Of a stretch of DNA of 64,000 bases, positions 5,963 to 58,697 are shown in pieces. Each line of letters starts with the position of its first letter. The stretch's first letter is position 1. The notes beneath the pieces were generated by a model, which made no database searches, had not been told where the DNA came from, and worked only from the letters and a program-made list of their open reading frames with translations. The stretch lies in the IMG/VR virus record IMGVR_UViG_3300027996_002186, positions 186,001 through 250,000 of that record. The stretch is one strand, 5' to 3'. A program made the position numbers and the translations under genes.

Positions 5963-5971
5963 TAATATATA
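5963..5971 (+). promoter_or_regulatory. late-promoter box, 4 nt before ATG
   Basis: TAATATATA-ccgt-ATG. Confidence 0.65.
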
Positions 5972-5975
5972 CCGT

Positions 5976-6392
5976 ATGTTGAAAAAGTATAACGAGTTTC
6001 TAAAAGAAAGTGTTTATGGTGATAAAGGTATGACTTATAATGATATAAGTGATATTATGTTATACATAACTGATGAGTTTCCGGAGTTAGGATTTTCAGT
6101 AGAGAATCCATTACAATCAGGCATCATTAAAAATGATGATAAATCATTTATTATACAACTTTTTGATAAAACCATAGATTTTCCAAATGATATGCCAACA
6201 TTATATCATATAGAGCCAAAGATACACGATTTAATATATGATGTTCATTCACAACTAAGTGGATTCGGGTTAAAGGTATTTTATAGTGATTTTGGATCTA
6301 CTGATGCTTATTATGAGTTGGTTATCACTGAAATTGGTCATAAACCACAGTTTATACCGGAGAGATATGATAATGATGGTAACCCAAACTAA
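5976..6392 (+). CDS. hypothetical protein with CTS-like leader
   Basis: 138 aa starting MLKKYNEFLKES. Confidence 0.75.
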   Translation: MLKKYNEFLKESVYGDKGMTYNDISDIMLYITDEFPELGFSVENPLQSGIIKNDDKSFIIQLFDKTIDFPNDMPTLYHIEPKIHDLIYDVHSQLSGFGLKVFYSDFGSTDAYYELVITEIGHKPQFIPERYDNDGNPN

Positions 6393-6428
6393 CCAAAAGA
6401 GAGGTGGATTCGATAGATATATAATTCT

Positions 6429-7162: not shown

Positions 7163-7168
7163 GTTTTA

Positions 7169-9097: not shown

Positions 9098-9103
9098 ATA
9101 ATT

Positions 9104-10887: not shown

Positions 10888-10999
10888 AAGCTTAGTTATT
10901 TTTGTACATATTATATATTAAAATTATAATTCTATTTTTCGAATTCAATGAAATTTAACTGGGTTATTTAATATATACTTTATAAATTAAAAAATACGC

Positions 11000-11395
11000 A
11001 TGAAAAAATTCACTAAAGTTTTAGAAGATATTGAGAATGGTAGATTCTTCAAAGTAAATGCTGAGATAGAACTTATATTACCTGCTGAAAATGAGGGCGA
11101 GGCAGGGTATCTATCAGATTCTATATTATCATCAATTGAGTATGGTTCAAATTATCAAATAAATAACATTGATTCTACTGAAGAAAGAATTGAAGAAAAT
11201 ATGGAAATATATAAACATAAGCAAGAGATGATGGGAGATGGTAAAACACCAGAAGAAATAATAGAATTAGCTTGGAAAAATGAGTTTGGTGATGCTATAC
11301 CTGATATAGAACAGAGAATGGAATTTTATCATGATATGAGATCAGATGGATATGAGACTGAATTAATATTTAAAGCGTTAAAAGGTAAATTTTAA
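11000..11395 (+). CDS. hypothetical protein with CTS-like leader
   Basis: 131 aa MKKFTKVLED; late box 10969-10977. Confidence 0.7.
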   Translation: MKKFTKVLEDIENGRFFKVNAEIELILPAENEGEAGYLSDSILSSIEYGSNYQINNIDSTEERIEENMEIYKHKQEMMGDGKTPEEIIELAWKNEFGDAIPDIEQRMEFYHDMRSDGYETELIFKALKGKF

Positions 11396-11429
11396 TTTAA
11401 TATATAAACAAGATAAAAAATTATAGAAT

Positions 11430-11984
11430 ATGAGAAAGTTTTCAGATTTTGGTGGTAAAAGGCCAGTTAAAGCAATAAATGAGGTAGAAGAAACGGTAGA
11501 TTTGCAACCAATTAGTGGAGATGGATCTGTTACTGCTAATCTACCTGGTAATGTAATCGTACCACAAGAAAAAAATGATGATGAGATAGTTGGTACAACA
11601 GAATCTAATGATGTTTCTACTTTCTTTTCTAAGTTATTTGAAAGTAGAGAAATGGCACACGTTTATCATTTACAAGTTAGAGGTGATGAAGGTTCTTATG
11701 CTAAACATATGGCACTTGGATCTTATTATGAAGAAGTTCTTGGTATGGTTGATGATGTTATCGAGGTTTATCAAGGTCAGTATGGTATAATAGAAAACTA
11801 TGATGTTATTGACACTAGTGAAACTAAATCAAAGGAACCAGTTGCTTATTTTGAAGAATTGGGTGAATATATAAAACATGCTAAAAAATGTATATCAGAA
11901 GAAGATACTCATTTACATAGTATAATTGATGATATTGTTTGTTTGATATACAAAACACTTTATAAGTTAAAATTTAATAAGTAA
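11430..11984 (+). CDS. ferritin/Dps-like four-helix protein (DUF5856-like) with CTS-like leader
   Basis: AHVYHLQ...SYAKHMALGSYYE...D..IEVYQGQYG...YKL; late box 11398-11406. Confidence 0.7.
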   Translation: MRKFSDFGGKRPVKAINEVEETVDLQPISGDGSVTANLPGNVIVPQEKNDDEIVGTTESNDVSTFFSKLFESREMAHVYHLQVRGDEGSYAKHMALGSYYEEVLGMVDDVIEVYQGQYGIIENYDVIDTSETKSKEPVAYFEELGEYIKHAKKCISEEDTHLHSIIDDIVCLIYKTLYKLKFNK

Positions 11985-11988
11985 TATA

Positions 11989-12498
11989 TAAGAAAGTTTA
12001 ATGAAGTTGTGAACAAGGCACTTATCGTAAAGATAAAAATGGTTTGATTTTACTAAGGATTATAAAAAAAAAAAAGGTTATGGCAATAGAAATACAAGGG
12101 TTTGAAACAAGATTTGGTGATAGTTACGAAAAAGCATATGCTCGTATAGTTTCTTTAAGTATAAATTATACTAGGGAAATTGCAGAGGTTAGTATTGGGA
12201 TTTATAGAAGTGAGCTTGATAGGGAAATAGGAAAAGACCCCGTATCACTAGAAAAAAAATTAATTGAAGGTTCTCATTTTATAGAGTTTTTCAAAGAGCT
12301 TCAAGTAGATAAAATTGATGCCAGTATAAATCCAATAGCAGATATTTATAATGACCTAACTATAAGAGAGGGTAAATATAAAGGTGGAAAGAAGTTATAT
12401 GATGAGATGATAAATGATGAAGGTGAGGTAAAAGAAATTAGCAAAGATGAAAAACTAAAGGAAATAAAATGAACCATTTAAGAAAGTTTAATGAAGTT
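11989..12498 (+). repeat. 20-bp exact direct repeat TAAGAAAGTTTAATGAAGTT at 11989-12008 and 12479-12498
   Basis: Read directly; both copies encode the leader peptide RKFNEV and flank one gene. Confidence 0.85.
12080..12472 (+). CDS. hypothetical protein
   Basis: ORF-track ORF 12044-12472; ATG 12080 after an A-tract is the more plausible start. Confidence 0.7.
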   Translation: MAIEIQGFETRFGDSYEKAYARIVSLSINYTREIAEVSIGIYRSELDREIGKDPVSLEKKLIEGSHFIEFFKELQVDKIDASINPIADIYNDLTIREGKYKGGKKLYDEMINDEGEVKEISKDEKLKEIK

Positions 12499-12739
12499 TG
12501 GGAGCCTACACTTCCAAATAAATATCCAAATTCTAGTGGTGAATTACTTAGAAATGAATTCGGTGAATTCAGTAAATCTAATGAGTGAGGTTAGAGATAT
12601 AATAAATAAAGTTGCTAAATTGGAAAAAACAGAAAGCGTAACAAGATATTTAGATGAATTACATAAATATTATAAAACGTTAGATAATGTTCCAGCAAAC
12701 TTAATGAATGGTAATATTAAATACAACTCAATTGATTAA
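12469..12739 (+). pseudogene. probably frameshifted CTS-leader gene (or two tiny ORFs)
   Basis: ATG 12469 gives MNHLRKFNEVWEP...SKSNE* (stop 12588); a coding-like frame (SEVRDIINKVAK...) continues in +1 to 12739. Confidence 0.5.
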
Positions 12740-12741
12740 AC

Positions 12742-12771
12742 AAAAAACCCAACTTAATCAGTTGGGTTTTT
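12742..12771. terminator. bidirectional intrinsic terminator
   Basis: AAAAAACCCAAC-TTAATCA-GTTGGGTTTTT. Confidence 0.75.
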
Positions 12772-12957
12772 AATTTTAAATATATTTTCTATTTTAGATT
12801 TCCTTATTAAATTTATAGTTCTTATAAAATATCTAGACTTGATAGATAACCTTGGTGTAAAGTTAGAATTAGAAATAGATTGTACTGTTTCTATTGGTAT
12901 ATAAGGCACCCAAACTAAACCTGATTGTAGTGAATTACTTGTTTTCTTACCCGTCAT
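12754..12957 (-). CDS. small protein containing a C-terminal-region fragment of gp23-type major capsid protein
   Basis: GLVWVPYIPIETVQSISNSNFTPRLSIKSRY aligns ungapped with T4 gp23 GIYYAPYVALTPLRGSDPKNFQPVMGFKTRY (recalled sequence). Confidence 0.65.
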   Translation of the reverse strand: MTGKKTSNSLQSGLVWVPYIPIETVQSISNSNFTPRLSIKSRYFIRTINLIRKSKIENIFKIKNPTD

Positions 12958-12978
12958 ATAAATTATATGATGTTTTGA

Positions 12979-13296
12979 TTATTTGTTTTCAGTATATAAA
13001 TACTTCCTTCCTTCATCATTATAATCCATTAGATTATTTATAACTGTATCAACTTTGTCTAAGCTATCATCCAATTCCTTTTTAATTATCTGTAATGCCG
13101 ATATAGAATCATCTATTTGGTCATTTCCTTTCTTTGATTGGTTTTTATAGTTATTTAGTTCGTTTATATAAGATTCGATTTTTTTATTCTTATCTTCTAT
13201 TGTAGAAGTAAATCCTCTCAAATCCTCTATTATCTCACCAACCCTTGCTGTTGATATGTCTATCTCTTCGTTTTCAAAAACTTTCTTAATTTTCAT
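12979..13296 (-). CDS. coiled-coil protein with CTS-like leader
   Basis: 105 aa MKIKKVFENE; heptad pattern. Confidence 0.7.
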   Translation of the reverse strand: MKIKKVFENEEIDISTARVGEIIEDLRGFTSTIEDKNKKIESYINELNNYKNQSKKGNDQIDDSISALQIIKKELDDSLDKVDTVINNLMDYNDEGRKYLYTENK

Positions 13297-13316
13297 ATGA
13301 TTGTATTTTTAATATT

Positions 13317-13330
13317 TAATATATATATTA
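13317..13330. promoter_or_regulatory. palindromic back-to-back late boxes serving divergent genes
   Basis: TAATATATATATTA is a perfect palindrome containing TAATATATA on both strands. Confidence 0.65.
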
Positions 13331-13333
13331 ATT

Positions 13334-14023
13334 ATGAAGAAGAGGAATAAGCTTATTTTAGAGTTTACTGAATTTAATTTGCAAAGATTTGGTGCTGAGT
13401 CTGCTGGTGGTACTGGTGTGCCAATGACTGATAATCCACAATTATCTTTGGATGCTTTTGATAAACACCAAAGTGGTGTTAGACAAGCTATGTCTAGAAT
13501 TGATGATATTCTTCATAACTTAAAAGGAACTAGTGCTTATTCTACATTAAGATCTAAATTAGCTTTAGAAGACCAAGATATAAAAAATATTAAAATACAA
13601 AGAATAATTAAATCTAATTCTGTTCATTATGATGTTTATTTGTCAATAATCATTGATGATATAGAATATTGGGGTACGATTCTTAACATAACTGGATTAG
13701 ATCCTAAATTTGAATCAGAAGTATTCAAAGACTTTGATTTATATCAACCAAAAGAATGGACTATTAAGATAAAAGGTTTAGTTATTAAAACATTAAAAGC
13801 TTGGTTAAAGCCTGATCCAGGTATGTATAAACTTATAAATAATGAAGTTATATGTTATTCAGTTGATACTGGTAAACAATTAAGAATGGAAAAAGGTATT
13901 GAGATTGAATTAGTTAGATCTCATGATGATAAAATCATTGTAAGACATGATAATGAATCTTATAATCTAGTTGGTGATAACTTTATCTACTTTAACTATT
14001 GGTTTGATCCAGTTGAAGATTAA
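13334..14023 (+). CDS. hypothetical protein (CTS-like leader)
   Basis: 229 aa MKKRNKLILEFTEFN. Confidence 0.75.
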   Translation: MKKRNKLILEFTEFNLQRFGAESAGGTGVPMTDNPQLSLDAFDKHQSGVRQAMSRIDDILHNLKGTSAYSTLRSKLALEDQDIKNIKIQRIIKSNSVHYDVYLSIIIDDIEYWGTILNITGLDPKFESEVFKDFDLYQPKEWTIKIKGLVIKTLKAWLKPDPGMYKLINNEVICYSVDTGKQLRMEKGIEIELVRSHDDKIIVRHDNESYNLVGDNFIYFNYWFDPVED

Positions 14024-15589
14024 TCAACTAAGTTTATCCTCTATTGACTTTAATCTAATATCTAACTCTTTTATTGATTCAGAAACTAATGCATACCATT
14101 CAGTTGGAAATTCTAATGATTTAACTTTATCATCATTAACAATTTTTTTAATTTCCGGATCTTGAGACTTTCTTTCCGTCACCCAATTTGGAAAGTGTGT
14201 TTGTACATCATCAGCTAAAAACCCTACGTCCTTTTTACCACTTATTTTCCAATTGAATTCAACAGCTTGTAACTTTTTAAGTTTATCTAGTGAGTTTGAT
14301 ATAGACTTTATATTAGTTTTAAGTCTTTTGTCAGATGTTCCTAACCAACTTCCACCACCACCCCCTTTTGATGCTGACCCATCCTGGTAAAAACTAAAGG
14401 CTCCAGTGTAATTTGCACTTCCATTATTACCATCTACTCTGATAGTGGTAAAATCAGCAGAATGTCTATAAATATAGGTGTGTGCTGGTGCAACCGGTGT
14501 GATAATTAAAGGATCATTTGCCGGTACAGTACTTCGACCAAGAATATCAATACCACCTTGTGAATTAGTGGTGCTACCACCTGTTCCTGTATATAACCAC
14601 CAATCCGCCTTTACTGTTGTTGTGGATCTAATAGCACCACTTGTGAAAAGATTGCCGTAAACATTATATGTTGAAGTACCACCGGCGATGGCGAGATGTC
14701 TCCCTGAGACTGTTGATGGAGAGGTCCCAATTCCTATATTACCAACAAAATATGCGCTTCTATTATTAGAGGCTGCGGTAACAAAGAGAGGCCATGCACT
14801 GAATTCGTCCCCTTTTATATAGAGTCCGTAAGCACCAACAGCAGCACCCCCAAGGGCAAAACCAACACCGACTCCCTTCATAAAGTTTCCCTTACCTTCC
14901 ACTCTGAGATTTTGAGTGTTGGGTGTAAATACTAACCCAGCATTAGTTCTTACATCATCGTAACCATCGCTATCTGAATTTATAAAAAGTATCCGTCTGT
15001 CGGTACTGGTCGTTCCATCATCCGAGTGATATATATTATCCGAATTTATACTATCTCCAACCGATAGTGTGTTTTGATTTACCCAAATCGGATTTGATCC
15101 TCCTGCTTGTAATACCTGTCCCGAAGATCCATTAGGTAAGTAACTTAATGCTAATGTACCAGAAGTTATATTACTAGCATTTAGTTGAGTTATAAAAGTT
15201 CCTTCACCATAAAACCCACCAGATCCATCTGATTGTATATCACCATTAACGTGAAGTGTTTTTATGGGTGATATGCCTATACCAACATTACTACCAACGA
15301 TCTGAATAATACTATCATCTAATACATTACCACCTCCAATGAATTTTGGTATGAATCCTGGAGTACCGCTACCTGCAATACCACTAGATGCTTCAGTTTC
15401 AAATGTTGTTCCATTCCATACATATGGTACTCCACTAACTCCATCGTTTAAATCCCATACACGCATACCTGCGTATTTATAAGGTAAATCATCCTTGTCT
15501 GTATAAAATTGACTAGGCCCAACAACTAATCTGTTATCGATGGCGTCTGCCACATTTACTTGAAAATTATCTATTATTTGTATTGCCAT
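14024..15589 (-). CDS. tail fibre/spike with C-terminal peptidase S74 intramolecular chaperone
   Basis: NVGIG repeats, Gly/Ser/Thr-rich body, SDKRLKTNI...F-x-WK...GFLA, terminal coiled coil. Confidence 0.85.
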   Translation of the reverse strand: MAIQIIDNFQVNVADAIDNRLVVGPSQFYTDKDDLPYKYAGMRVWDLNDGVSGVPYVWNGTTFETEASSGIAGSGTPGFIPKFIGGGNVLDDSIIQIVGSNVGIGISPIKTLHVNGDIQSDGSGGFYGEGTFITQLNASNITSGTLALSYLPNGSSGQVLQAGGSNPIWVNQNTLSVGDSINSDNIYHSDDGTTSTDRRILFINSDSDGYDDVRTNAGLVFTPNTQNLRVEGKGNFMKGVGVGFALGGAAVGAYGLYIKGDEFSAWPLFVTAASNNRSAYFVGNIGIGTSPSTVSGRHLAIAGGTSTYNVYGNLFTSGAIRSTTTVKADWWLYTGTGGSTTNSQGGIDILGRSTVPANDPLIITPVAPAHTYIYRHSADFTTIRVDGNNGSANYTGAFSFYQDGSASKGGGGGSWLGTSDKRLKTNIKSISNSLDKLKKLQAVEFNWKISGKKDVGFLADDVQTHFPNWVTERKSQDPEIKKIVNDDKVKSLEFPTEWYALVSESIKELDIRLKSIEDKLS

Positions 15590-15607
15590 GTTCTATATAT
15601 AAATTTT

Positions 15608-17125
15608 TTAATATTTGAATTGGTAATTTACCGATGGTGGTCCAATTTGTGGAGCCCCATTCCATTGATAAACATAAAATTCTTTTGCTGCCCATAATCC
15701 TGTTGGTGATGATAAAACTATTGGTGTGTATGAGAATGATCCTGATGATGTATTCCCATACTCATCATATATATTTGATAATGTTCCATAATCAGAATCA
15801 TATATAAAATATAAATTACCAATCCCATTAATATCAATTATCTTATCACCCATTGATTCTGTTAATTTTGATAACCCAGCTAATCCAATACTATTCATTG
15901 TTAAATTTGTACTAAATCCATGAAAATATGGATAAATACCTGTAATCTGAGTACTTGCTGATGCTGTGTTTAATCCATCACCGACAGTAATTTTAAATTC
16001 TGTACTCACTGGTAGTATTGGTGATATAACAACACCACTTGAACTACCAGTTATTGTTTCATAAGAATTACTTACGATTGCTGGATAAGCCCCAGGTATC
16101 ATATTACTTAATCCGGTTATTGATGTATTTAATGTTTTCTTATTAATTGTATATTGTATTGAGGGTGATGGATAAGTACCAACTTCAGCATAACCAACTG
16201 AATAAACACCTGTTATTTCTATACTACAAGATGGTGGTAAATAATCATATATTATTCTTCTTAAACCCTCTGATAAAGGCATATTATTAAAAGTATCACC
16301 GTAGTTTATATCTCCTATTTCAACCGGACACATTCTGTCATCAGCAAATTCTAAAGAATAACCATTGAGACCCGCTGAAGTTACGTTTGTTGGTGTTCCA
16401 TAAATATCTAATTGTGATCCAGTATTTCCTATATAGTTTAAATCTGGTAATTTTATAAAATCCCAAATTAATTCACCATCCTCCATAATAAGAATCTTTT
16501 CATTAGAGGCTGATAAACCACTCTCATCGGATGTTGGGAATATTATATTATTTACTATAACACTTCCAGTATATCCACTACCAATCAAACTACCTTGTAT
16601 GTTTACATCACCAAATGATGGATTTATTATGTCTAATGACAGTGATTGTGTAGTTCCTGATACTATTTGACTTTGTATATAAGGAGCTTTTGTGTGTAGT
16701 GATAAATTTGTACCAGCTATTATAGCAACTCTTGTTGATGTTTGACTTTTTGTATCTATTTTTGTATTATAAAGAAATATATCAACATCACTTGTTAATA
16801 AAGTATCATTCATTATATTATCAAATTCATTATATGAATAAGTTCCAGAAAATGCTCTTTTACCTAAATAAATTTTTCTTTTAATATCTCTTTCACTTGG
16901 GTTGATAGCATCTAATCCAACATAAGATACCGTACCACCTGGAACCGTTGTTTGTTTAAATGGTACACTTGACCACAAAGACAAAATAGCATCTCTTATA
17001 TCCAAAGGGTTTACTAATTTATCCTCGTTATCCTCAAGCTTTAATAAGATATCATCCAAGTAATCTTGTACTGGATAACTTATCGCTTCAGTTGGTAAAC
17101 CTGTATTTACACTGAATGTCATCAT
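15608..17125 (-). CDS. putative virion structural protein (paralog of 17128-18762)
   Basis: 505 aa, beta-rich; shared blocks P.D.RDA..W, DIK..I..GKR.F, DIFLYNTK. Confidence 0.7.
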   Translation of the reverse strand: MMTFSVNTGLPTEAISYPVQDYLDDILLKLEDNEDKLVNPLDIRDAILSLWSSVPFKQTTVPGGTVSYVGLDAINPSERDIKRKIYLGKRAFSGTYSYNEFDNIMNDTLLTSDVDIFLYNTKIDTKSQTSTRVAIIAGTNLSLHTKAPYIQSQIVSGTTQSLSLDIINPSFGDVNIQGSLIGSGYTGSVIVNNIIFPTSDESGLSASNEKILIMEDGELIWDFIKLPDLNYIGNTGSQLDIYGTPTNVTSAGLNGYSLEFADDRMCPVEIGDINYGDTFNNMPLSEGLRRIIYDYLPPSCSIEITGVYSVGYAEVGTYPSPSIQYTINKKTLNTSITGLSNMIPGAYPAIVSNSYETITGSSSGVVISPILPVSTEFKITVGDGLNTASASTQITGIYPYFHGFSTNLTMNSIGLAGLSKLTESMGDKIIDINGIGNLYFIYDSDYGTLSNIYDEYGNTSSGSFSYTPIVLSSPTGLWAAKEFYVYQWNGAPQIGPPSVNYQFKY

Positions 17126-17127
17126 AA

Positions 17128-18762: not shown

Positions 18763-18810
18763 CGATATAATTACTTTTTATGTATATATTAAAAAGTGAT
18801 ACTAGGTAAT

Positions 18811-18839
18811 AAAAAATCCGATAATTACTTATCGGATTT
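18811..18839 (-). terminator. intrinsic terminator
   Basis: AAAAAATCCGATAA-TTAC-TTATCGGATTT; U-tract on minus strand. Confidence 0.7.
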
Positions 18840-18885
18840 AAATATAATTTTGATTCTATGTTTTTGGGTTGGATTTAGTAAAGAA

Positions 18886-19287: not shown

Positions 19288-19314
19288 AATTATTACTTTA
19301 TATTTTGTTTTATA

Positions 19315-20025: not shown

Positions 20026-20088
20026 AAATTATATATTAACCTACATGAACTTCCTAAAATAAATATATAAGAAAAATAACTATTAGAT

Positions 20089-20859: not shown

Positions 20860-20874
20860 TTTAATATATACTTT

Positions 20875-22536: not shown

Positions 22537-22547
22537 CCTTATATTTG
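22537..22547 (+). promoter_or_regulatory. early promoter CCTTATATTTG
   Basis: Exact 11-mer, 5 nt before ATG 22553. Confidence 0.75.
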
Positions 22548-25272: not shown

Positions 25273-25299
25273 TAAACATTTTATTGTATTAATATATAA
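25273..25299 (+). promoter_or_regulatory. TAAAC-N17-TATAA promoter overlapping a late box
   Basis: TAAAC 25273-77, TATAA 25295-99; TAATATATA 25290-98 lies 4 nt before ATG. Confidence 0.6.
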
Positions 25300-27498: not shown

Positions 27499-27509
27499 CC
27501 TTATATTTG
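27499..27509 (+). promoter_or_regulatory. early promoter CCTTATATTTG
   Basis: Exact 11-mer upstream of micro-ORF and tRNA. Confidence 0.75.
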
Positions 27510-27789: not shown

Positions 27790-27836
27790 CTAATTTTCCT
27801 TTTTAAGTCTATTGAGTTGTTTAATTGATATATTTT

Positions 27837-27847
27837 CCTTATATTTG
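27837..27847 (+). promoter_or_regulatory. early promoter CCTTATATTTG
   Basis: Exact 11-mer, 4 nt before ATG 27852. Confidence 0.75.
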
Positions 27848-28490: not shown

Positions 28491-28530
28491 ATTAGTAACT
28501 TAATATATAATAAAAACTCATAATAAATTA

Positions 28531-30442: not shown

Positions 30443-30453
30443 AGTGTATATAT

Positions 30454-30482
30454 AAAAAAAAGAGAGTCATTTAGACTCTCTT
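30454..30482 (-). terminator. intrinsic terminator overlapping the next late box
   Basis: AAAAAAAAGAGAGTC-ATTTA-GACTCTCTT. Confidence 0.7.
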
Positions 30483-30507
30483 AATTAACTGTTCGTATTT
30501 TTACTTA

Positions 30508-32984: not shown

Positions 32985-32996
32985 ATACTATATATT

Positions 32997-33983
32997 ATGT
33001 TTGGTAGACTCTTTTTTGACAACGAAATAACTAACTTCTTACAAGTTAGTTCAAATAACAAAATTTCAATGATAATGCTTAATGGTAGTCAGGGGGCTAT
33101 TATAGAAGTTGGTAATTTTATTCGTAGGGATAGAAGTAAAATTGATGTTGTATCATTTATTCCAATTAAAAAGATTGATTTTGATGCTGATAAGCTCGGT
33201 TGGGATGATGTTGATAATCTTATGATACAATCTACAAATAGAATAAATGTTAAAATTGGTAGATTTCTGAGAAAATTTTTATCAAGCCAATCAATTGTTG
33301 ATTTTGGTATATCTGATAAAGATATTGAAGATTTTGTTAACCTTTTCAAATCATATTTCACTCCTGATAAAAATAAGTTACAAATAACTGATGGTGTCGA
33401 TATATTAAAATGGTATTTAGAAGATAATTATGCAACTACTTGTGGTAATCGAAGTGGTAGTCTTTGGAAGTCTTGTATGAGACAAAGCGAAAGAAATAAG
33501 TATATGGTTCTTTATACAAAAAATATTTCATTGGTGAAGATGTTAATATTCTTAACAGACGATGGTAAATTAAGAGCCAGAGCACTTTTGTGGGAAAATG
33601 TTGTTGATAAATATGGTAATTCTTATAAAGTGATGGATAGAATTTATTCTATTTATGACCACGATATGTTCTTATTTAAGGGTTGGGCCAAAGAAAATGG
33701 TTATATAACTAAATTAGAACAAAGTGCTAAATCAGAAGTATTGTTTGATGTGAATGGACAACCTACTACTTTAGAATTAAGAATTAAATTAAATAATTGG
33801 GAAATGAACGATTATCCTTATTTAGATACATTTAAGTATTTTGATTTATATGGTGGTTGGTTATCAAATACTGTGAATTTCAGATATCAGTATAAACTAG
33901 TACAGTGTGATGGTTGTGTTGAGAGACAAAGTGAAGAAGAAGAGTATAATGAAGAAGAATATGACGAAGGAGAGGATTGGTAA
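32997..33983 (+). CDS. hypothetical phage protein (SCM...RALLW...MDRIY type)
   Basis: 328 aa with acidic tail. Confidence 0.7.
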   Translation: MFGRLFFDNEITNFLQVSSNNKISMIMLNGSQGAIIEVGNFIRRDRSKIDVVSFIPIKKIDFDADKLGWDDVDNLMIQSTNRINVKIGRFLRKFLSSQSIVDFGISDKDIEDFVNLFKSYFTPDKNKLQITDGVDILKWYLEDNYATTCGNRSGSLWKSCMRQSERNKYMVLYTKNISLVKMLIFLTDDGKLRARALLWENVVDKYGNSYKVMDRIYSIYDHDMFLFKGWAKENGYITKLEQSAKSEVLFDVNGQPTTLELRIKLNNWEMNDYPYLDTFKYFDLYGGWLSNTVNFRYQYKLVQCDGCVERQSEEEEYNEEEYDEGEDW

Positions 33984-35830: not shown

Positions 35831-35936
35831 TCAGTAAATTAATTTTTTGGTATATACTAATATATATCTTATTCTATTATATCTCTTTAAGAACTCAAAA
35901 TTTTTAATATATATACCGAAAAAATATATTTTTGTA

Positions 35937-41871: not shown

Positions 41872-41899
41872 TTTGATTTGATAAATTAATATATAGATT

Positions 41900-42823: not shown

Positions 42824-42922
42824 TGTCTAATTATTTTAATTTATATATATTATTACCCTTTTTGTTTTTATAGAAGCCGAGAATAAATATATATAGTATA
42901 ACTTAAAAAAAAATTAAAGTAA

Positions 42923-45619: not shown

Positions 45620-45660
45620 CTTTCAAATTTTAATATATAATTAAAATAAAAAATTGTTAT

Positions 45661-48839: not shown

Positions 48840-48901
48840 TATAAAATCCTTATTGAGAAAATATAAATAAAAGGTAATCATGTGAGTATAATATATACTC
48901 T

Positions 48902-50111: not shown

Positions 50112-51815
50112 ATGCTTATAAGTGAAATAGGAATTAGGGGTTATAAATCATTTGGAAACAATGAACAAGTCTTAAAATTAAATACGGAAAGAGGTGAATT
50201 ACTACTTCTTGTCGGTAACAACGGTAATGGTAAATCTTCATTACTAGAATCTTTTGAATACGTACTTTATGGTAAAGTAAAGTCAGGTAAAACAAAGAAA
50301 TGGCACAAGTTGTCAACACTACCAAATAGAATAAACGGAGAACTTCTTAATAGAATAAAATTTGTTGCTAATGGAACAGAGGTTGAAGTTAAACGTGGTA
50401 TATCACCAGGTATCTTAGAATTAACCGAAAATGGTGTTGTTAATGAAAGAGCTGGTAAATCAAACATAGACGATCATATAGAAAAGTATATTGGGTTAGA
50501 TATTGAGACATTTAAGTCCTTTATATCAATGTCTATTAATGATTTCAAAAACTTTATATCATTAACTAATGAAGAAAAGAAATTATTACTTGATAAATTA
50601 TTTAATCTTGAAGTTATTAATGTACTCAATGGTATATTAAAGGATATCAATAAAAATAATAAAGTTAGATTAGCTTCTTTGGATTCTGAGATAAGAACAT
50701 TAGAAGAATCGATTGATTCTATTAAGAGGTCAGTTGCTAAGGCTATTGAAAGAGAGAAAGAAGATCTTCAACAAGAGATAGATGTTTTAATTAAAGAAAT
50801 GAACTCTAAGAAAGGAGATTACAAGTTATTAAAAGAAAAAGTTGAGAAGATAAAGGGTAAAGAGAAAATTTTAACCAAAGAAATGGATACTGAGAAAAGT
50901 CAGTATAGTAATACAAAGAATGATATTAAGAATGTTCAGAGGGAAATAGACCTTTATGATTCTGGTAAATGTCCTACTTGTTCAACTGATTTCAAATCAA
51001 CACATTTTGCTGATTTGAGAACTTCTTTATTGGAGAAGAAACAAGGATTTGATGATATTAAACTTGAAATCGAAGAAAATATTAAAAGTGTTAAGGCTAA
51101 ACAAGTTAAATTGAAAGAAATAGCTGATGGTACAACAACATCATTTAACGATTTATCTTACTTACTACGTAATTATAAAACTAAGATTGATGAATTATCA
51201 AGAAAGCAGGGTAGGGAGATTGGTAAAGAATCTATTAATGTACAAGAGTTTCAAAAAACAATTGAAGAGTTAGAAGAAAAGAAAGGTTTTAGCCACGATA
51301 ATATCTCTATTAGTAAAGAAAAGGAACTTTATTATAAAGAGTTGAATCGCATATTTGGTGAGGATGGTGTTAAGAAAGCAATTATCGCTGGTATTATTAA
51401 ACCAATAAACCATTTCATAAAAGAGAATGTTAAAACAATGGGGTTACCATTTGATGTTCAGTTAGACGAAACGTTTACTGCTGAGATTAAAATGTTAGGT
51501 GTTCCCATTGAACATGATTCATTATCAACTGGTGAAACTAAAAAGATAAATATTGCTATTTTGATAGCTTATTTGAAATTGATACGAACTAAGAAACATA
51601 TCAATATACTCTTCTTAGATGAAGTATTTGCCTCTATTGATATAGAGGGAATAGATTCTATATTGGGTCTCTTAAAATCATTCGCAAACGACTATAATAT
51701 CAATATATTTGTTGTTCATCACGCAATTTTAAGTCAGGAGATGTTTGATAGAATTATTAAAATAAATAAAGATATTTTTTCATCTGTTGAAGAGGTGGTT
51801 TATGAGTATGTCTAA
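50112..51815 (+). CDS. SbcC/Rad50-like recombination endonuclease subunit (T4 gp46)
   Basis: GNNGNGKSS Walker A, coiled coil, CPTC zinc hook, LSTGE signature, LFLDE Walker B. Confidence 0.92.
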   Translation: MLISEIGIRGYKSFGNNEQVLKLNTERGELLLLVGNNGNGKSSLLESFEYVLYGKVKSGKTKKWHKLSTLPNRINGELLNRIKFVANGTEVEVKRGISPGILELTENGVVNERAGKSNIDDHIEKYIGLDIETFKSFISMSINDFKNFISLTNEEKKLLLDKLFNLEVINVLNGILKDINKNNKVRLASLDSEIRTLEESIDSIKRSVAKAIEREKEDLQQEIDVLIKEMNSKKGDYKLLKEKVEKIKGKEKILTKEMDTEKSQYSNTKNDIKNVQREIDLYDSGKCPTCSTDFKSTHFADLRTSLLEKKQGFDDIKLEIEENIKSVKAKQVKLKEIADGTTTSFNDLSYLLRNYKTKIDELSRKQGREIGKESINVQEFQKTIEELEEKKGFSHDNISISKEKELYYKELNRIFGEDGVKKAIIAGIIKPINHFIKENVKTMGLPFDVQLDETFTAEIKMLGVPIEHDSLSTGETKKINIAILIAYLKLIRTKKHINILFLDEVFASIDIEGIDSILGLLKSFANDYNINIFVVHHAILSQEMFDRIIKINKDIFSSVEEVVYEYV

Positions 51816-51926: not shown

Positions 51927-52121
51927 ATGTTAATAATAAAGGTTAAAGAGGGTGAGAAGATTGAAAGAGCTCTGAAAAGGTATAAAAATAAACACCGAAA
52001 AACGAAAGTTATGAATGAAGTTAGAGATAGAAAAAACTTCAAGAAAAAAAGTGTTAAGCGTAGAGAAGAAAAGAATAAAGCTATTTATATACAAAAGATT
52101 AAAGATAACGAAAAGGATTAA
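51927..52121 (+). CDS. rpsU: ribosomal protein bS21
   Basis: MLIIKVKEGEKIERALKRYK.K......EVRDRKNFKKKSVKRRE, Bacteroidota-type. Confidence 0.9.
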   Translation: MLIIKVKEGEKIERALKRYKNKHRKTKVMNEVRDRKNFKKKSVKRREEKNKAIYIQKIKDNEKD

Positions 52122-55068: not shown

Positions 55069-55092
55069 ATTTATGTTTTTAATCTATTTTTA

Positions 55093-58000
55093 TCAAGAAC
55101 CTCCGCCACCACCACCTGATGATTCTCCATCATTATTATCACTTGGATCATTGTATGATGATTCTGTTGATAAACTATCCAAACCAATAACGATATTATC
55201 GATAAAGCTGAATTGATTATCTTCATAATCTATAAATGGTGCTACTCCTTGAAAGGGAATTTGTACAGCTTTGTTTATATAATCATCAGTTATGTATTTG
55301 AAAAAAGGAGCTTTATCTATCTCATAGAATTTGATATTATCCATAGATGTTGTTAAATCACCATTAGCTAGTAATAAAATATTTAAATCTCTTCTATTGA
55401 AGAAATATTCATACTTTCTTGTTTTATTTGTTTGTATGTGATTTACAAATTCTTGATCTGGGAAAGCTTTATATGGTACTACAGCAGCAACATCTAAAGT
55501 ATTTAATAAATAAATACTTGGTTTTTCTCCATCATAAACATTAAGAGGATTTTGTGGATTACCACCTCCGGTTAACCCCTCAAAGGATAATAAATCAAAT
55601 TCAACCATTGAATATCTTTTCTTTTCAATAGTAACATTTGTATTATTTAGTTTGAAACTACCAGAAGCTGAACCAGAACCAGTTTCTTTTATAATATCTA
55701 TTTGGAATGATTCAGTTGAATCATTCCTTTCTAACATAAGTTCATTTTCCGATAATCCGGATGATAAACTATATGTCCATCCATCATTTATAAAGGTACC
55801 TAATCCACCATTAAAGTTCCTGGTTTGATAACCAAAAGGAAAAGATGGTCCTGTAGCAGAGCTAAATGGATCATTAAATTCTGAGAAGTCACCCAAGAAA
55901 TCTTCATAAATTTCATATTTAGTACCTAGTGAATAAATAGTATTTCTTAAATTATAACTATTTCTAAAAGATGATTTACTATCAAGAACATCTTCTGTTA
56001 TGTGTCCGTATAAATTATTCTGTGAGTATTTCCCAAACCCAAACTCATATATAGTTTGACTTCTTCCTAGGTTGGTAGCTGATTCATCCAACCACTTAAC
56101 ATCAATCCACGAATTATAGCTATAAACGGATTCTAAATTAGATGTTTCTAGAACAGTACTCGGAGCAACATTATTATCAATAAAATCAAAGTTTTGTATA
56201 ACTGCAGTTCCGGTTCTACTACTAACTAGACCACCTTCTGATGTAGAAGAGGCTCCAAATTGTTTATCAATCACAATCATATAATCATCAACAACAGCAA
56301 TAACATTTGATTCTCCATTGTAGTGTATATTAAAATTTTGGTCATCCATATTAATATTAACTTTATCACCAACCACAAATCCATGTGCTGTTGCTCCAAA
56401 TGTTAACCCTAGTGTGTTTGGTGAGGTTTCTTGCCACCAATAAGTATCAACAAAACTAGATTCATGGTAGTTCCCGTAGAAGTGACCACCATCATACCTA
56501 CCGTCTATCCAGTGTGTGTTATACATTTCTGTTATATATGGAAATCCTTTAAATAGTCCGTTATTCCAAATACCTTCAAAATACCCATTTAAGAAACCAC
56601 CATTCAACCAAACATTTTTTGTTATTTTTATCTTATGGTTATCAGAATCTTTTTCAATTCTTCTAAGCGGAAATGTATTATTAAAATCAACAACAATACT
56701 ATTATCAAATCCTCCTTCACCAACTATGTTAACAAATAATACAGTGAAGTAATTTGTCATTAACTTTCTATTTTCATTAATATCTATACCAACTATATTT
56801 CCTATTGACACTTTATCACCAACTTTAAAGTATGATACTACCTCTTTTCTTCCGGATATTTTTATCCTCCATCTTATATTTGTTGTATTCATCATCTTTG
56901 ATATTTCTACATCATCGAATTCTTGAACATCACCATCAACTCGCCAACCACTATTCCAAACACCATTTTCCCAAATACCTTGTTTGAATATCCCATTTCC
57001 TACTTTAGCTTTTAATGAATTAAGATTTATAATATTACCATATAAATTTGAAAAATATCCAGGGAATCCAGTTGCTCCAAATAACTCAGATAATGTTACA
57101 CCAGTTCCCGGAGGAACCGATGCTGAAAAGGTCAATACTTCATGTAATGTATTTTCATTAACAACATTAACGCTATAAGTCGCATCATATGAACCACCAA
57201 TAACACAAAGTTCTGTTGGTTCTTCATATAAATCTGTTTCTGTGAATAAAAATTGTTCATTGTTATCATTTTCTTGGTATGCGCCATCTATTGAAAAATT
57301 ACTCAATAGTATCGATGTCGAATAGGCCCAATCACCACTTTGAGTAAACCCATCATTATTACCCCTAAATAGGAGATATTGATTTCCTTTTAAACCAAAA
57401 TATTTATAATTACCATCAGCGTCTATTTTACCCAAAAATTGACCACCACTCAATATATTCTCAAAATCTGTGATGTTATTAGTTTTTAAATTATCTCCCA
57501 AACTATCAATTAAATACATATCAACATATGAATCATCACTAAATCCAGCATCAGCATCAAATGATATATTAAATGATGCGTATGGTATAAACCTTGATAT
57601 ATAGTTACTTGATGTGAATCCAGTTAAGCATGGTTGATAGGGTAAAGGAATCTGTTCATCTATTCCGAGGTAAGTAAAAATGAAATAACCCGGGTAGTAT
57701 CCGTAAGGTAATCTATCTGAGTAAGCATCCTGTCCGTCAAAGTCTACCGGAATACCATCTGGTGGTGCAGATATGAATTCAATTGGTCTTTGTGGTTGAA
57801 ATCTAAAACTATCATTAGTAAAATCATATTTCCACCCAGCTGAATATATTTCATCAGCCTCACCAACATCACCTTGGTTGGAACTCAAAGCCCACCCTTG
57901 TACAAACCAGTCCATTTCTACCACTTTGAATTCTTTAATGGTTGCTGTTCCATAATAATTGGGAAATGCTGCAGATCCAAATTCATCAAAACTAGATTCG

Positions 58001-58578
58001 TAGGTTACAAGATCGGGTCTTCCGAGAGGCGATCGATAAGCATTTGTTGTTGTATTACCAGGACTGTTAGAATTGACATCTACAATATTTTGGGGGTTTA
58101 TAATGTTACTTGGACTAGAGAAATATTGTAACGTAACGTCACCCTCACTCAATGGTCTGCTATCCTTTCTCCAATCTTCTGGAAAATTAAATGGTGGAAA
58201 GAATGGTAACTCCGCAAGTGTGTGTGTTTTATATTCAAAATATCCAGTGTTCGGTTGAAGTATTGATAAATTTCCTGTGGTGTCGAAAGCCCAAGGTGTC
58301 AGTATTTTTAGATATCTATTGCTAGATAAATTATCTATTCCAGAAGGAACTCCCCCGCCACCTCTGGATGTGAAAGCATTAACCTTTGTTAAAAATAAGT
58401 AATTTTTATTAGAATTATACGTTGTAGCGCCATTAGTTTCGGGCCAAAAAAGCATTTTCCGTACAGGTAGATTAGTTGCTCCATTATTTAGTGTGGTCAT
58501 ACCCGTGCCGTTATCATCCCAAAATCGACCTGTAAATGGAGGAATGTTATTGTTAAGAAATTCTGTTTGCCATGCCAT
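55093..58578 (-). CDS. large putative virion protein with W-x-x-G-x repeats
   Basis: 1161 aa; GIWENGVWNSGW, WLNGGFLNGYFEGIWNNG; TAATATATA-gttt-ATG. Confidence 0.7.
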   Translation of the reverse strand: MAWQTEFLNNNIPPFTGRFWDDNGTGMTTLNNGATNLPVRKMLFWPETNGATTYNSNKNYLFLTKVNAFTSRGGGGVPSGIDNLSSNRYLKILTPWAFDTTGNLSILQPNTGYFEYKTHTLAELPFFPPFNFPEDWRKDSRPLSEGDVTLQYFSSPSNIINPQNIVDVNSNSPGNTTTNAYRSPLGRPDLVTYESSFDEFGSAAFPNYYGTATIKEFKVVEMDWFVQGWALSSNQGDVGEADEIYSAGWKYDFTNDSFRFQPQRPIEFISAPPDGIPVDFDGQDAYSDRLPYGYYPGYFIFTYLGIDEQIPLPYQPCLTGFTSSNYISRFIPYASFNISFDADAGFSDDSYVDMYLIDSLGDNLKTNNITDFENILSGGQFLGKIDADGNYKYFGLKGNQYLLFRGNNDGFTQSGDWAYSTSILLSNFSIDGAYQENDNNEQFLFTETDLYEEPTELCVIGGSYDATYSVNVVNENTLHEVLTFSASVPPGTGVTLSELFGATGFPGYFSNLYGNIINLNSLKAKVGNGIFKQGIWENGVWNSGWRVDGDVQEFDDVEISKMMNTTNIRWRIKISGRKEVVSYFKVGDKVSIGNIVGIDINENRKLMTNYFTVLFVNIVGEGGFDNSIVVDFNNTFPLRRIEKDSDNHKIKITKNVWLNGGFLNGYFEGIWNNGLFKGFPYITEMYNTHWIDGRYDGGHFYGNYHESSFVDTYWWQETSPNTLGLTFGATAHGFVVGDKVNINMDDQNFNIHYNGESNVIAVVDDYMIVIDKQFGASSTSEGGLVSSRTGTAVIQNFDFIDNNVAPSTVLETSNLESVYSYNSWIDVKWLDESATNLGRSQTIYEFGFGKYSQNNLYGHITEDVLDSKSSFRNSYNLRNTIYSLGTKYEIYEDFLGDFSEFNDPFSSATGPSFPFGYQTRNFNGGLGTFINDGWTYSLSSGLSENELMLERNDSTESFQIDIIKETGSGSASGSFKLNNTNVTIEKKRYSMVEFDLLSFEGLTGGGNPQNPLNVYDGEKPSIYLLNTLDVAAVVPYKAFPDQEFVNHIQTNKTRKYEYFFNRRDLNILLLANGDLTTSMDNIKFYEIDKAPFFKYITDDYINKAVQIPFQGVAPFIDYEDNQFSFIDNIVIGLDSLSTESSYNDPSDNNDGESSGGGGGGS

Positions 58579-58697
58579 AAACTATATATTAATTATATAC
58601 TTCCTTTTGTGTAAAAATACTTACGAATATTCACCGCTATATTCCGTGATGTTACTTTATCGATTCAGTCAAAAACTTGAAGCTTACTTCATGTTCA

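What the first reader, a model, noticed from the sequence alone, without database searches (positions are those of the whole stretch)
5963..58591. Late box sits exactly 4 nt before ATG in ten genes: predicted leaderless late mRNAs
Seen: T(A/T)ATATATA-N4-ATG at starts 5976, 20875, 25303, 41900, 48902 (+) and 15589, 20025, 30442, 32984, 58578 (-). N5 variants occur at 6429 and 3045. Most other genes with the box have A-rich leaders of roughly 20-30 nt (13334 has 8 nt). Established: the T4 late box TATAAATA lies about 5 nt upstream of the start site. Inference: the fixed spacing puts the TSS on or next to the A of ATG, so many late mRNAs would be leaderless. The other two promoter classes show the same geometry (22553, 27852, 12957, 63866), suggesting a genome-wide translation strategy in a phage that also encodes bS21.
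Basis: partly seen in the sequence, partly recalled or inferred. Interest (0 to 1): 0.68.

Follow-up and report, generated by a model that had tools for sequence, protein, structure and literature searches.

The report
Phage promoter box abutting start codons
A 483-kb marine phage that probably infects Flavobacteriaceae places its own promoter box (TAATATATA) exactly 4-6 bases before the ATG of about 75 genes, so these genes are probably made as leaderless mRNAs, a design rare in the host phylum; no RNA 5' end has been mapped.

Summary
All ten T[AT]ATATATA-N4-ATG sites exist.

In the whole 483-kb phage:
- 204 of 235 boxes lie in the 7% of the genome that is non-coding.
- An ATG follows at a gap of 4, 5 or 6 nt 44, 28 and 11 times, against about 5 expected (P = 2e-28 for gap 4).
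- A second mode lies at 16-31 nt, and gaps of 9-15 nt are almost absent.

Evidence that the box is a phage-specific promoter core:
- Four related 634-735-kb phages carry the same box at the same distance.
- All 12 ortholog comparisons keep the box and a 4-5 nt gap while the gap letters change.
- The phage's host-type promoters (-33 TTTG / -7 TATATTTG) show the same two modes. In Flavobacterium the start site lies 4-5 nt after that element.
- In leadered genes an A-rich patch sits at box+5 to +7, where the A of ATG sits in the short class.
- Some boxes abut terminators. Others overlap back to back between divergent start codons only 17-32 bp apart.

The short class is therefore most likely leaderless (confidence about 0.7). 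This was not shown directly, because the only RNA run gave uninformative contigs. The "late" label and the bS21 link remain unproven. Thermus phages are the closest known analogue.

The parts
5963..5971 (+). Box TAATATATA, 4 nt before the ATG at 5976 (138-aa ORF, no family match); short class
20862..20870 (+). Box, 4 nt before the ATG at 20875 (278-aa SAM-methyltransferase-like); the LR745206 ortholog keeps the box and a 4-nt gap
25290..25298 (+). Box, 4 nt before the ATG at 25303 (159 aa); both orthologs keep the box and a 4-nt gap with different gap letters
41887..41895 (+). Box, 4 nt before the ATG at 41900 (124 aa); both orthologs keep a 4-nt gap (letters gatt / gact / gata)
48889..48897 (+). 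Box, 4 nt before the ATG at 48902 (109 aa, T5orf172/MUG113 domain); ortholog gaps are 4 and 5 nt
15594..15602 (-). Box TTATATATA, 4 nt before the ATG at 15589 (521-aa tail-fibre protein with Peptidase_S74 chaperone domain)
20030..20038 (-). Box, 4 nt before the ATG at 20025 (236-aa N6/N4 DNA methylase). It lies in a 63-bp divergent intergenic region shared with gene 20089 (+). The ortholog gap is 5 nt.
30447..30455 (-). Box TTATATATA, 4 nt before the ATG at 30442 (451 aa). The T-run of an upstream terminator-like hairpin runs directly into the box.
32989..32997 (-). Box, 4 nt before the ATG at 32984 (71 aa). It lies in and beyond a 12-bp divergent intergenic region and overlaps the ATG of gene 32997 (+).
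58583..58591 (-). Box, 4 nt before the ATG at 58578 (1161-aa ORF, no family match)
3155..3163 (+). Box of the leadered class, 31 nt before the ATG at 3195 (UvsX/RecA-like recombinase)
10969..10977 (+). Leadered-class box, 22 nt before the ATG at 11000
11398..11406 (+). Leadered-class box, 23 nt before the ATG at 11430 (Dps-like, DUF5856)
18783..18791 (-). Leadered-class box, 20 nt before the ATG at 18762 (544 aa); the ortholog also has a 20-nt gap
28501..28509 (+). Leadered-class box, 21 nt before the ATG at 28531 (NUDIX hydrolase)
45631..45639 (+). Leadered-class box, 21 nt before the ATG at 45661 (386 aa)
63799..63807 (-). Leadered-class box, 22 nt before the ATG at 63776 (1692-aa ORF)
42844..42852 (-). 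Leadered-class box, 20 nt before the ATG at 42823 (143 aa)
13322..13330 (-). Leadered-class box, 25 nt before the ATG at 13296. It partly overlaps the + strand box at 13317-13325, which serves gene 13334 (gap 8, or 6 if shifted).
35905..35913 (+). Leadered-class box, 24 nt before a GTG that opens a small ORF of about 72 codons (about 35938-36152)
22540..22547 (+). Host-type (Bacteroidota sigma-A) -7 element TATATTTG, 5 nt before the ATG at 22553 (metallophosphoesterase)
27840..27847 (+). Host-type -7 element TATATTTG, 4 nt before the ATG at 27852 (DNA-ligase-like). Ortholog gaps are 3 nt in LR745206 and 19 nt in LR756502.
51927..52121 (+). Phage bS21 gene (64 aa), closest to bS21 of marine Flavobacteriaceae. 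It has neither a box nor a host -7 element directly upstream.

Best explanation
T[AT]ATATATA is the -10/-7-like core of a phage-specific promoter class in a 483-kb marine phage of the Mahaphage group, whose host is most likely a marine Flavobacteriaceae.

The box has no -33/-35 partner. It is probably read by host RNA polymerase core carrying a phage-encoded sigma. Candidates are a short gp55-like 'late sigma' ORF and two ECF-type sigmas. Transcription would start at an A 5-7 nt past the box.

In about 40% of these promoters (74 exact cases genome-wide, 10 in the window) that A is the A of the ATG. These mRNAs would be leaderless, with a 0-2 nt leader, and would need 5'-AUG-dependent initiation. 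In the other promoters the start site is followed by a 14-25 nt A-rich leader without a Shine-Dalgarno sequence, which is the normal Bacteroidota type.

The phage's host-type promoters follow the same either/or design.

Shown: the motif, its position and its spacing; conservation of the spacing; similar geometry to host promoters; the sigma genes. Inferred: the exact start site, which sigma reads the box, the timing of expression, and the mode of translation.
For: 1. Promoter-like placement. 204 of 235 boxes lie in the 7.3% of the genome that is non-coding and are oriented toward genes. 78 of 153 box genes sit at divergent junctions, against 182 of 627 for all genes.
2. Bimodal spacing: 41, 23 and 10 genes at gaps of 4, 5 and 6 nt, about 73 at 16-31 nt, and 2 at 9-15 nt.
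3. Reference geometry. In F. johnsoniae the -7 element lies at -12..-5 with 4-5 nt to the start site (PMC6847099). The phage's own 36 full host-type promoters (-33 TTG(G) plus TATATTTG) show the same two modes: 15 at 3-6 nt and 21 at 15-35 nt.
4. In the 76 leadered box genes, A is enriched at box+5, +6 and +7 (58, 55 and 56 of 76, against 39 at +4 and 37 at +8). These are the positions of the A of ATG in the short class.
5. The base before the ATG is T in 78% of gap-4 genes and never G. This fits the pyrimidine(-1)/purine(+1) preference of bacterial polymerase.
6. Conservation. The same box and distance occur in LR745206 (45 sites, control 2), LR756502 (50, control 0), LR756504 (30, control 0) and LR756501 (27, control 4). 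In 12 of 12 ortholog comparisons for 8 window genes the exact box and a 4-5 nt gap are kept while the gap letters differ. Leadered orthologs drift by 0-8 nt.
7. No room for a leader. Divergent start codons 17, 25 and 32 bp apart each have a box, and the boxes overlap. Seven short-class boxes are fused to the T-run of a terminator-like hairpin.
8. Start codons at gaps 4-6 are ATG 76, GTG 4, TTG 0.
9. The box is phage-specific. Box-N4-5-ATG occurs 72 times against 5 in the control in the phage. Three Flavobacteriaceae genomes have 2-11 against 3-6.
10. Sigma genes. There are two ECF-type sigmas and a 121-aa match to PHROG 234 'late sigma transcription factor' (E = 2e-7). No RNA polymerase beta, beta-prime or T7-type hit was found.
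11. Host. bS21 is 60-72% identical to marine Flavobacteriaceae bS21. Only 8 of 629 genes have an SD-like motif. The related genomes were predicted to infect Bacteroidetes (PMC7162821).
Against: - No 5' end has been mapped. The single metatranscriptome run gave only six 151-338 nt contigs inside three genes, and none reached a start.
- 41 of 77 short-class genes have a same-strand upstream neighbour at a median of 48 bp. They could also, or mainly, be translated from read-through polycistronic RNA in which the box is simply part of an AT-rich spacer.
- Leaderless mRNAs are rare in the host phylum: 5.5% in F. psychrophilum and 3.7% with a UTR under 10 nt in B. thetaiotaomicron. Efficient leaderless translation in these hosts is therefore unproven.
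- Which register of the 9-mer corresponds to -12..-5 is uncertain by 1 nt, so 1-2 nt leaders are as likely as none.
- The sigma that reads the box is unknown. The gp55-like ORF is short and the match is modest.
- Divergent phage RNA polymerases can escape Pfam.
- My gene calls use ATG-only starts from a simple codon-usage caller.
Confidence: 0.7

Rival explanations
1. The box is a real promoter, but short-class genes are translated mainly from longer transcripts (read-through from upstream genes, or additional upstream start sites). Leaderless RNAs would then be a minor or poorly translated species, and the tight spacing would reflect genome compaction with a promoter packed against the next ORF.
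For: 41 of 77 short-class genes have a same-strand upstream neighbour, with a median intergenic distance of 48 bp. Host-phylum leaderless mRNAs are rare. Coding density is 93%.
Against: Packing alone would not give a sharp 4-5 nt mode conserved in 12 of 12 orthologs, or an almost empty 9-15 nt zone. 36 short-class genes are at divergent junctions, some with only 12-32 bp between start codons. Seven are directly behind terminator-like hairpins. Start codons are 95% ATG.
Confidence: 0.15
2. The box is transcribed and acts in the RNA. It could be a non-SD ribosome-binding or enhancer element, an operator for a translational repressor, or a cleavage site for an endoribonuclease that trims RNAs to near-leaderless form. 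The true promoters would lie further upstream.
For: In Bacteroidota, A/T-rich motifs at short fixed distances from starts are translation signals present before most genes (GeneMarkS-2 group B, PMC6028130). The box is AT-only and lies next to the AUG in 74 genes.
Against: The same 9-mer sits 16-31 nt from the start in as many genes. It is enriched at divergent junctions. It overlaps its own mirror copy in 17-25 bp intergenic regions, where no upstream promoter fits. It follows terminator T-runs. It occupies the same position as the phage's bona fide host-type -7 elements. It is an alternating TA motif, not the A-rich TAAAAA-type signal seen before the other genes.
Confidence: 0.08
3. The box is the promoter of a phage-encoded non-canonical RNA polymerase that was not detected by profile searches. 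Its start site would have a different offset, for example inside or right after the box, which gives 4-9 nt leaders rather than none.
For: Jumbo-phage polymerases are very divergent. Four ORFs of 898-1905 aa in the window have no family match.
Against: No beta, beta-prime or T7-type domain was found genome-wide, while three sigma-family ORFs are present. The geometry is identical to that of the host-type sigma-A promoters in the same genome. The A patch lies at box+5 to +7.
Confidence: 0.05
4. Chance or a composition artefact of a 30% GC genome.
For: ATATATA-like strings are common in AT-rich DNA.
Against: P = 2e-28 at gap 4. Reversed-pattern controls give 1 against 34 and 5 against 72. The box is 12-fold concentrated in non-coding DNA. 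The pattern is conserved in four other genomes.
Confidence: 0.01

Closest known systems
Leaderless transcripts of Thermus phages phiYS40 and Lalka27a
   Same: These are lytic phages in which most mapped transcripts begin with the A or G of the start codon. They are driven by phage-class promoters read by a modified host polymerase (bioRxiv 10.64898/2026.04.20.719267).
   Different: Their host phylum (Deinococcus-Thermus) is itself rich in leaderless genes (PMC12340547, PMC6028130). Here the host phylum has about 4-6% leaderless mRNAs. Only about 40% of promoter-proximal genes have the leaderless design, and the rest have A-rich leaders. The promoter consensus differs. Nothing has been mapped experimentally here.
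Bacteroidota sigma-A promoter (-33 TTTG / -7 TAnnTTTG)
   Same: The position relative to the start site is the same: element at -12..-5, with 4-5 nt to +1 (PMC6847099). The box shares A-11, T-8 and T-6. The phage also carries 36 full promoters of this type with the same two spacing modes.
   Different: The box has A instead of the near-invariant T-7 and G-5. It has no -33 TTTG. It is not enriched before ATG in Flavobacteriaceae genomes.
T4 late promoter TATAAATA read by gp55 with gp33 and the sliding clamp
   Same: Both are single 8-9 bp AT-only boxes near -10 without a -35 element. A gp55-family ORF is present (PHROG 234). A tail-fibre gene is under the box.
   Different: The sequence differs, and TATAAATA itself shows no positional peak. 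From general knowledge, T4 late mRNAs are leadered and carry SD sequences. gp33 and a clamp were not found (uninformative because the control was silent). Box-driven genes are not restricted to late functions.
Promoter-adjacent (leaderless) genes of Actinobacteria and Deinococcus-Thermus (GeneMarkS-2 group C)
   Same: The inference logic and anatomy are the same: a Pribnow-type box at a fixed short distance from the start of first-in-operon genes, coexisting with leadered genes (PMC6028130; PMC12340547).
   Different: In those genomes the gap is 6-8 nt after TATAAT, read by the housekeeping sigma, in cellular genomes. Here the gap is 4-6 nt after a phage-specific box, in a virus of a phylum classed as group B (non-SD, leadered).
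Jumbo phages with mapped start sites (phiKZ, AR9)
   Same: They are very large phages with their own AT-rich promoter classes.
   Different: phiKZ has no leaderless transcript (PMC8244752). AR9 5' UTRs are 26-491 nt (PMC5312081). Both use phage multisubunit polymerases, which were not detected here.

Membership tests
Leaderless (promoter-adjacent) genes | A -10-type promoter box at a fixed short distance upstream of the start codon | tested here: met
   74 genes have the exact box 4-6 nt before the ATG. P = 2e-28 at gap 4.
Leaderless (promoter-adjacent) genes | Primary transcript 5' end at, or within a few nt of, the start codon | not testable with these tools
   The only RNA run held contigs inside genes, and none reached a start. 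No raw-read run was available.
Leaderless (promoter-adjacent) genes | Two-mode leader-length distribution (none, or long enough for 30S binding), with few leaders of about 5-12 nt | tested here: met
   Box-to-start distances are 4-6 nt (74 genes) and 16-31 nt (about 73), with only 2 at 9-15 nt. The host-type promoters show the same pattern.
Leaderless (promoter-adjacent) genes | Start codon almost always AUG | tested here: met
   ATG 76, GTG 4, TTG 0 at gaps 4-6 with ORFs of at least 60 codons. GTG starts were seen in leadered cases.
T4-type late promoter / gp55 system | A single AT-rich box near -10 with no -35 element | tested here: met
   No upstream position exceeds about 0.5 bit apart from a weak A-tract about 17 nt 5' of the box. 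The host-type set shows a clear -33 TTG(G).
T4-type late promoter / gp55 system | Consensus TATAAATA | tested here: not met
   The consensus here is T[AT]ATATATA. TATAAATA has no positional peak before starts.
T4-type late promoter / gp55 system | A gp55-family sigma is encoded | tested here: inconclusive
   A 121-aa ORF (genome 126163-126528) matches PHROG 234 'late sigma transcription factor' with E = 2e-7, covering profile positions 10-123 of 181. The genomic match runs on through 3 TAA stops.
T4-type late promoter / gp55 system | gp33 co-activator and gp45-type sliding clamp | tested here: inconclusive
   Pfam DNA_PPF gave no hit, but the control genomes were also silent. gp33 was not searched.
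T4-type late promoter / gp55 system | Drives late (virion) genes specifically | tested here: inconclusive
   The tail fibre is box-driven, but so are UvsX-like, DNA methylase, NUDIX and Dps-like genes. No expression timing data exist.
Bacteroidota sigma-A promoter | -7 element TAHHTTTG with near-invariant T-7 and G-5 | tested here: not met
   The box has A at both positions. A separate set of 36 promoters in this genome does meet the feature.
Bacteroidota sigma-A promoter | -33 TTTG about 19-21 bp upstream | tested here: not met
   It is absent from box promoters and present in the TATATTTG set.

The most novel reading that the evidence does not exclude
The clade that contains the largest known phage genomes (483-735 kb, Bacteroidota hosts) runs a dual translation programme. 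Roughly one gene in six to eight, and about 40% of promoter-proximal genes, would be expressed as truly leaderless mRNA in hosts that hardly use this mode. The phage-encoded bS21 would retune host ribosomes to favour these SD-less and leaderless phage messages over host mRNAs.
Probability: 0.12. Interest if true: 0.85.

Novelty: new member of a known kind. Interest (0 to 1): 0.55.

Why it matters
- It supplies a concrete, testable promoter consensus and start-site prediction for an uncultured clade that includes the largest phage genomes known. In the papers I could search, neither a promoter nor leaderless expression has been described for this clade.
- If start sites coincide with the ATG, these phages rely heavily on leaderless initiation in a phylum where it is rare. 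This bears on how SD-less Bacteroidota ribosomes select mRNAs and on why such phages carry bS21.
- The box corrects start-codon calls. For example, it favours 3045 over 3060 for the gene at 1177-3060, and a GTG start for the small ORF at about 35938.
- It could guide the design of expression cassettes for Flavobacteriia.

Tried and rejected
- **RNA evidence.** One run search and one lay of 6000 letters (window 14901-20900, runs X20 and X1) were used. X20 gave six contigs of 151-338 nt at 100% identity, inside genes 17128-18762, 18886-19287 and 20089-20859. There were no ends at starts and no strand or level information. This says nothing on start sites and does not prove transcription.
- **Single-protein locus searches in viral contigs** found only another contig of the same phage. 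Orthologs were taken instead from LR745206 and LR756502.
- **Literature.** I found no paper with this box as a phage promoter. Neither the bS21-phage paper nor the huge-phage paper analyses promoters or leaderless expression. The phiYS40 primary paper is not held and is cited through a later preprint.
- **Phage RNA polymerase.** No Rpb2_6, Rpb1_2 or T7-type hit was found. The T7-type control was silent, so that result is weak.
- **IF3 and IF1.** No hits.
- **Sliding clamp DNA_PPF.** No hit, with a silent control.
- **Third promoter class.** TATAAATA and TATAAT show no distance peak. De novo k-mers before the remaining genes are only A-rich leader words.
- **A(+4) as a leaderless signal.** It is 71-90% in the short class, 43% in leadered box genes and 63% in box-less genes. 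This is not discriminating.
- **Rfam.** Only the tRNA was found.
- **Not used.** The large protein searches, structure prediction and complex prediction were not used, because no claim needed them.

Full report
**What the window is.** The 64-kb window is bases 186001-250000 of a 483,262-bp virus record (29.6% GC, estimated 98% complete). About half of a 24-kb stretch of it aligns at about 80% nucleotide identity to LR745206 (634 kb), and a small part at 74% to LR756502 (642 kb). These belong to the set of largest known phage genomes, placed in the 'Mahaphage' clade with predicted Bacteroidetes hosts (PMC7162821). Near-identical DNA occurs in seawater, marine and brine metagenomes from at least 15 studies. 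The phage's bS21 (window 51927-52121) is 60-72% identical to bS21 of marine Flavobacteriaceae such as Winogradskyella, Tenacibaculum and Mangrovimonas. Only 8 of 629 predicted genes have a GGAG/GAGG motif before the start. The genome also carries 36 complete Bacteroidota-type promoters. A marine flavobacterial host is therefore the working assumption.

**Observation check.** All ten T[AT]ATATATA-N4-ATG sites are present at the stated coordinates, and each ATG opens an ORF of 71-1161 codons. The window has 28 boxes. Ten have a 4-nt gap and about eleven lie 20-31 nt before a gene start. Two of the latter only become clear once a spurious short ATG is ignored (box 10912-10920 serves the start at 10887, 24 nt away) or a GTG start is allowed (box 35905-35913).

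Genome-wide there are 235 boxes, and 204 of them lie in the 7.3% of the genome that is non-coding. An ATG follows at gaps of 4, 5 and 6 nt in 44, 28 and 11 cases, against 4.9 expected (P = 2e-28, 2e-13, 0.01). With a simple codon-usage gene caller (629 genes), 176 genes have a box within 100 nt. The distances are 41, 23 and 10 genes at 4, 5 and 6 nt, about 73 at 16-31 nt, and only 2 at 9-15 nt. Allowing one mismatch in the box, or counting the host-type element, 119 of 629 genes have a promoter core at the short distance.

**Why the box is a promoter core.**
- It is concentrated in intergenic DNA and points toward genes.
- 78 of 153 box genes are first genes at divergent junctions, against 29% of all genes.
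- It is specific to the phage. Box-N4-5-ATG occurs 72 times against 5 for the reversed control in the phage. Three Flavobacteriaceae genomes have 2-11 against 3-6.
- The 9-mer resembles the Bacteroidota -7 element. In the register that puts the last base at -5, it shares A-11, T-8 and T-6 with TAHHTTTG. It has A where T-7 and G-5 are nearly invariant in the host element (PMC6847099).
- It lacks the -33 TTTG that is plainly visible in the phage's 36 TATATTTG promoters.
- A different sigma is therefore expected. The genome encodes two ECF-type sigma factors of about 200 aa and a 121-aa ORF matching PHROG 234 'late sigma transcription factor', the gp55 kind.
- No polymerase beta, beta-prime or T7-type domain was found.

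**Where transcription probably starts.** No 5' end could be mapped, but five indirect lines agree.
1. In Flavobacterium johnsoniae the -7 element is followed by 4 or 5 nt and then the start site (PMC6847099).
2. The phage's own host-type promoters show the same two spacing modes as the box: 15 at 3-6 nt and 21 at 15-35 nt. A occupies the fifth base after the element in 26 of 36.
3. In the 76 leadered box genes, A is enriched at exactly box+5, +6 and +7 (58, 55 and 56 of 76), flanked by 39 and 37. In the short class, the A of ATG sits at those same three positions (41, 23 and 10 genes).
4. The base before the ATG is T in 78% of gap-4 genes and never G. This fits a pyrimidine(-1)/purine(+1) start.
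5. There is no room for a leader in several places. Divergent start codons 17, 25 and 32 bp apart each have a box, and the two mirror boxes overlap. In the window, genes 32984 (-) and 32997 (+) are 12 bp apart. Seven short-class boxes are fused to the T-run of a GC-containing hairpin that looks like the terminator of the upstream gene, among them window gene 29087-30442.

**Evolutionary constraint.** Exact TAATATATA-N4-ATG occurs 45 times in LR745206 and 50 times in LR756502, with controls of 2 and 0. With N4-5 it occurs 30 and 27 times in LR756504 (636 kb) and LR756501 (735 kb), with controls of 0 and 4. The 735-kb genome prefers a 5-nt gap beginning with G. For eight window short-class genes with orthologs (protein identity 60-97%), all 12 comparisons keep an exact box and a gap of 4 or 5 nt, while the gap letters differ (for example gatt / gact / gata). 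Leadered orthologs keep the box in 7 of 11 comparisons, with the distance drifting by 0-8 nt. One host-type promoter switches class between orthologs: 27852 has gaps of 4, 3 and 19 nt.

**Translation.**
- Start codons at gaps 4-6 are ATG 76, GTG 4, TTG 0. GTG starts were seen behind leaders.
- Leaders of the long class are A-rich with almost no G. The remaining genes are preceded by A-rich words such as AAAATAA. This is the known non-SD signal of Flavobacteria (PMC6028130).
- The near-empty 9-15 nt zone fits the idea that an mRNA is either 5'-AUG-initiated or has a leader long enough for 30S loading.
- The contrast with the host phylum is the interesting point. Leaderless mRNAs are 5.5% in F. 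psychrophilum (PMC9723704), 3.7% below 10 nt in B. thetaiotaomicron with a modal UTR of 23 nt (PMC7366714), and at most 13% with leaders of 10 nt or less in F. johnsoniae.
- By the same crude pattern count, TAHHTTTG-N4-5-ATG is only 1.2-1.3 times its control in three Flavobacteriaceae genomes, but 2.7 times in the phage.

**What is not supported.**
- *The 'late' label.* Box-driven genes in the window include a tail fibre. They also include a UvsX/RecA-like recombinase, an N6/N4 DNA methylase, a SAM methyltransferase, a NUDIX hydrolase, a Dps-like protein and a T5orf172-domain protein. Host-type promoters drive a metallophosphoesterase, a ligase-like protein and a DUF6011 protein. A two-stage programme (host sigma-A first, then a phage sigma) is plausible, but the timing is unknown.
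- *A third promoter class.* No third class with this geometry was found.
- *The bS21 link.* The gene itself has neither promoter element directly upstream. The bS21-phage literature does not address leaders. In E. coli it is bS21-lacking ribosomes that are reported to accommodate leaderless mRNA better (PMC10491246). No IF1 or IF3 gene was found.

**Direct RNA test attempted.** The one RNA run holding this DNA (X20, a marine metatranscriptome kept as contigs) gave six pieces of 151-338 nt inside three genes of window 14901-20900. None touched a start or a box. This neither supports nor refutes the model.

**Comparison with known systems.**
- The anatomy and inference match promoter-adjacent leaderless genes of Actinobacteria and Deinococcus-Thermus (PMC6028130, PMC12340547).
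- Among phages, they match Thermus phages phiYS40 and Lalka27a, where most mapped transcripts start with the initiator codon (bioRxiv 10.64898/2026.04.20.719267).
- Other jumbo phages with mapped starts have no leaderless RNAs: phiKZ and AR9.
- The case here differs in three ways: the host phylum, the promoter consensus, and the even mix of leaderless and leadered designs under one box.
- I file it as a new member of a known kind. The prediction is strong and the clade is notable, but no mechanism is yet shown to be new.

**Verdict.** The promoter identity has confidence of about 0.9. Leaderless expression of the short class has confidence of about 0.7. The late timing and the bS21 coupling are unproven.

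Noticed in passing
genome 20017-20043, 121975-122008, 409940-409958 (outside the window); window 32984-32997: Divergent gene pairs whose start codons are only 12-32 bp apart. Two mirror-image boxes overlap through the ATATATA palindrome, which makes minimal bidirectional promoters. The two polymerases could not bind at the same time.
   Followed up: partly
window 30447-30500 (-); genome 114469, 120987, 139798, 295925, 358129, 359433: Terminator-like hairpins whose T-run forms the 5' flank of the box (...TTTTTTATATATA-N4-6-ATG). Terminator, promoter and start codon are packed into about 45 nt.
   Followed up: partly
window 27719-27790 (+): A tRNA-Cys (GCA) gene lying between two host-type TATATTTG promoters (27502-27509 and 27840-27847).
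   Followed up: no
window 36154-41871 (+), 58698-63776 (-), 55093-58578 (-), 42923-45619 (+): Four very large ORFs (1905, 1692, 1161 and 898 aa) with no PHROG match, and no Pfam match for the two tested (1161 and 898 aa). They are conserved in LR745206 and LR756502 and may be virion proteins.
   Followed up: no
window 1177-3060 (-): A 627-aa protein with repeated HNH/homing-endonuclease-like domains (PHROG 559, E = 7e-122). The first ATG (3060) lies upstream of a near-box (TGATATATA). The ATG at 3045, 5 nt after the box, is the more likely start.
   Followed up: partly
window 35938-36152 (+): A small ORF of about 72 codons that starts with GTG, 24 nt after box 35905-35913. ATG-only gene calling missed it. 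A second box at 35858-35866 lies 38 nt upstream of the first.
   Followed up: partly
window 33989-35830 (-): A 613-aa protein combining an N-terminal ATPase that matches terminase-large, primase and helicase-loader families with a C-terminal PhoH-like domain.
   Followed up: no
genome 126157-126582 (+), outside the window: The gp55-like 'late sigma' match covers a 121-aa ORF, but the profile alignment continues through three TAA stops. The gene may be truncated or split, or the extension may be noise in AT-rich DNA.
   Followed up: no
LR756501.1 (735 kb), whole record: In the largest genome the short-class spacing is almost always 5 nt, with G directly after the box (TAATATATAG-N4-ATG). This suggests a slightly extended box or a shifted register in that lineage.
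   Followed up: no
window 50112-51815 (+) and 3195-4421 (+): An SbcC-like nuclease subunit and a UvsX/RecA-like recombinase. The recombinase is behind tandem boxes at 3089-3097 and 3155-3163.
   Followed up: no
window 10901-20900: Near-identical DNA (0.66-0.99 of sampled words) was found in seawater, marine and brine metagenomes from at least 15 studies. The phage appears to be widespread in the ocean.
   Followed up: no
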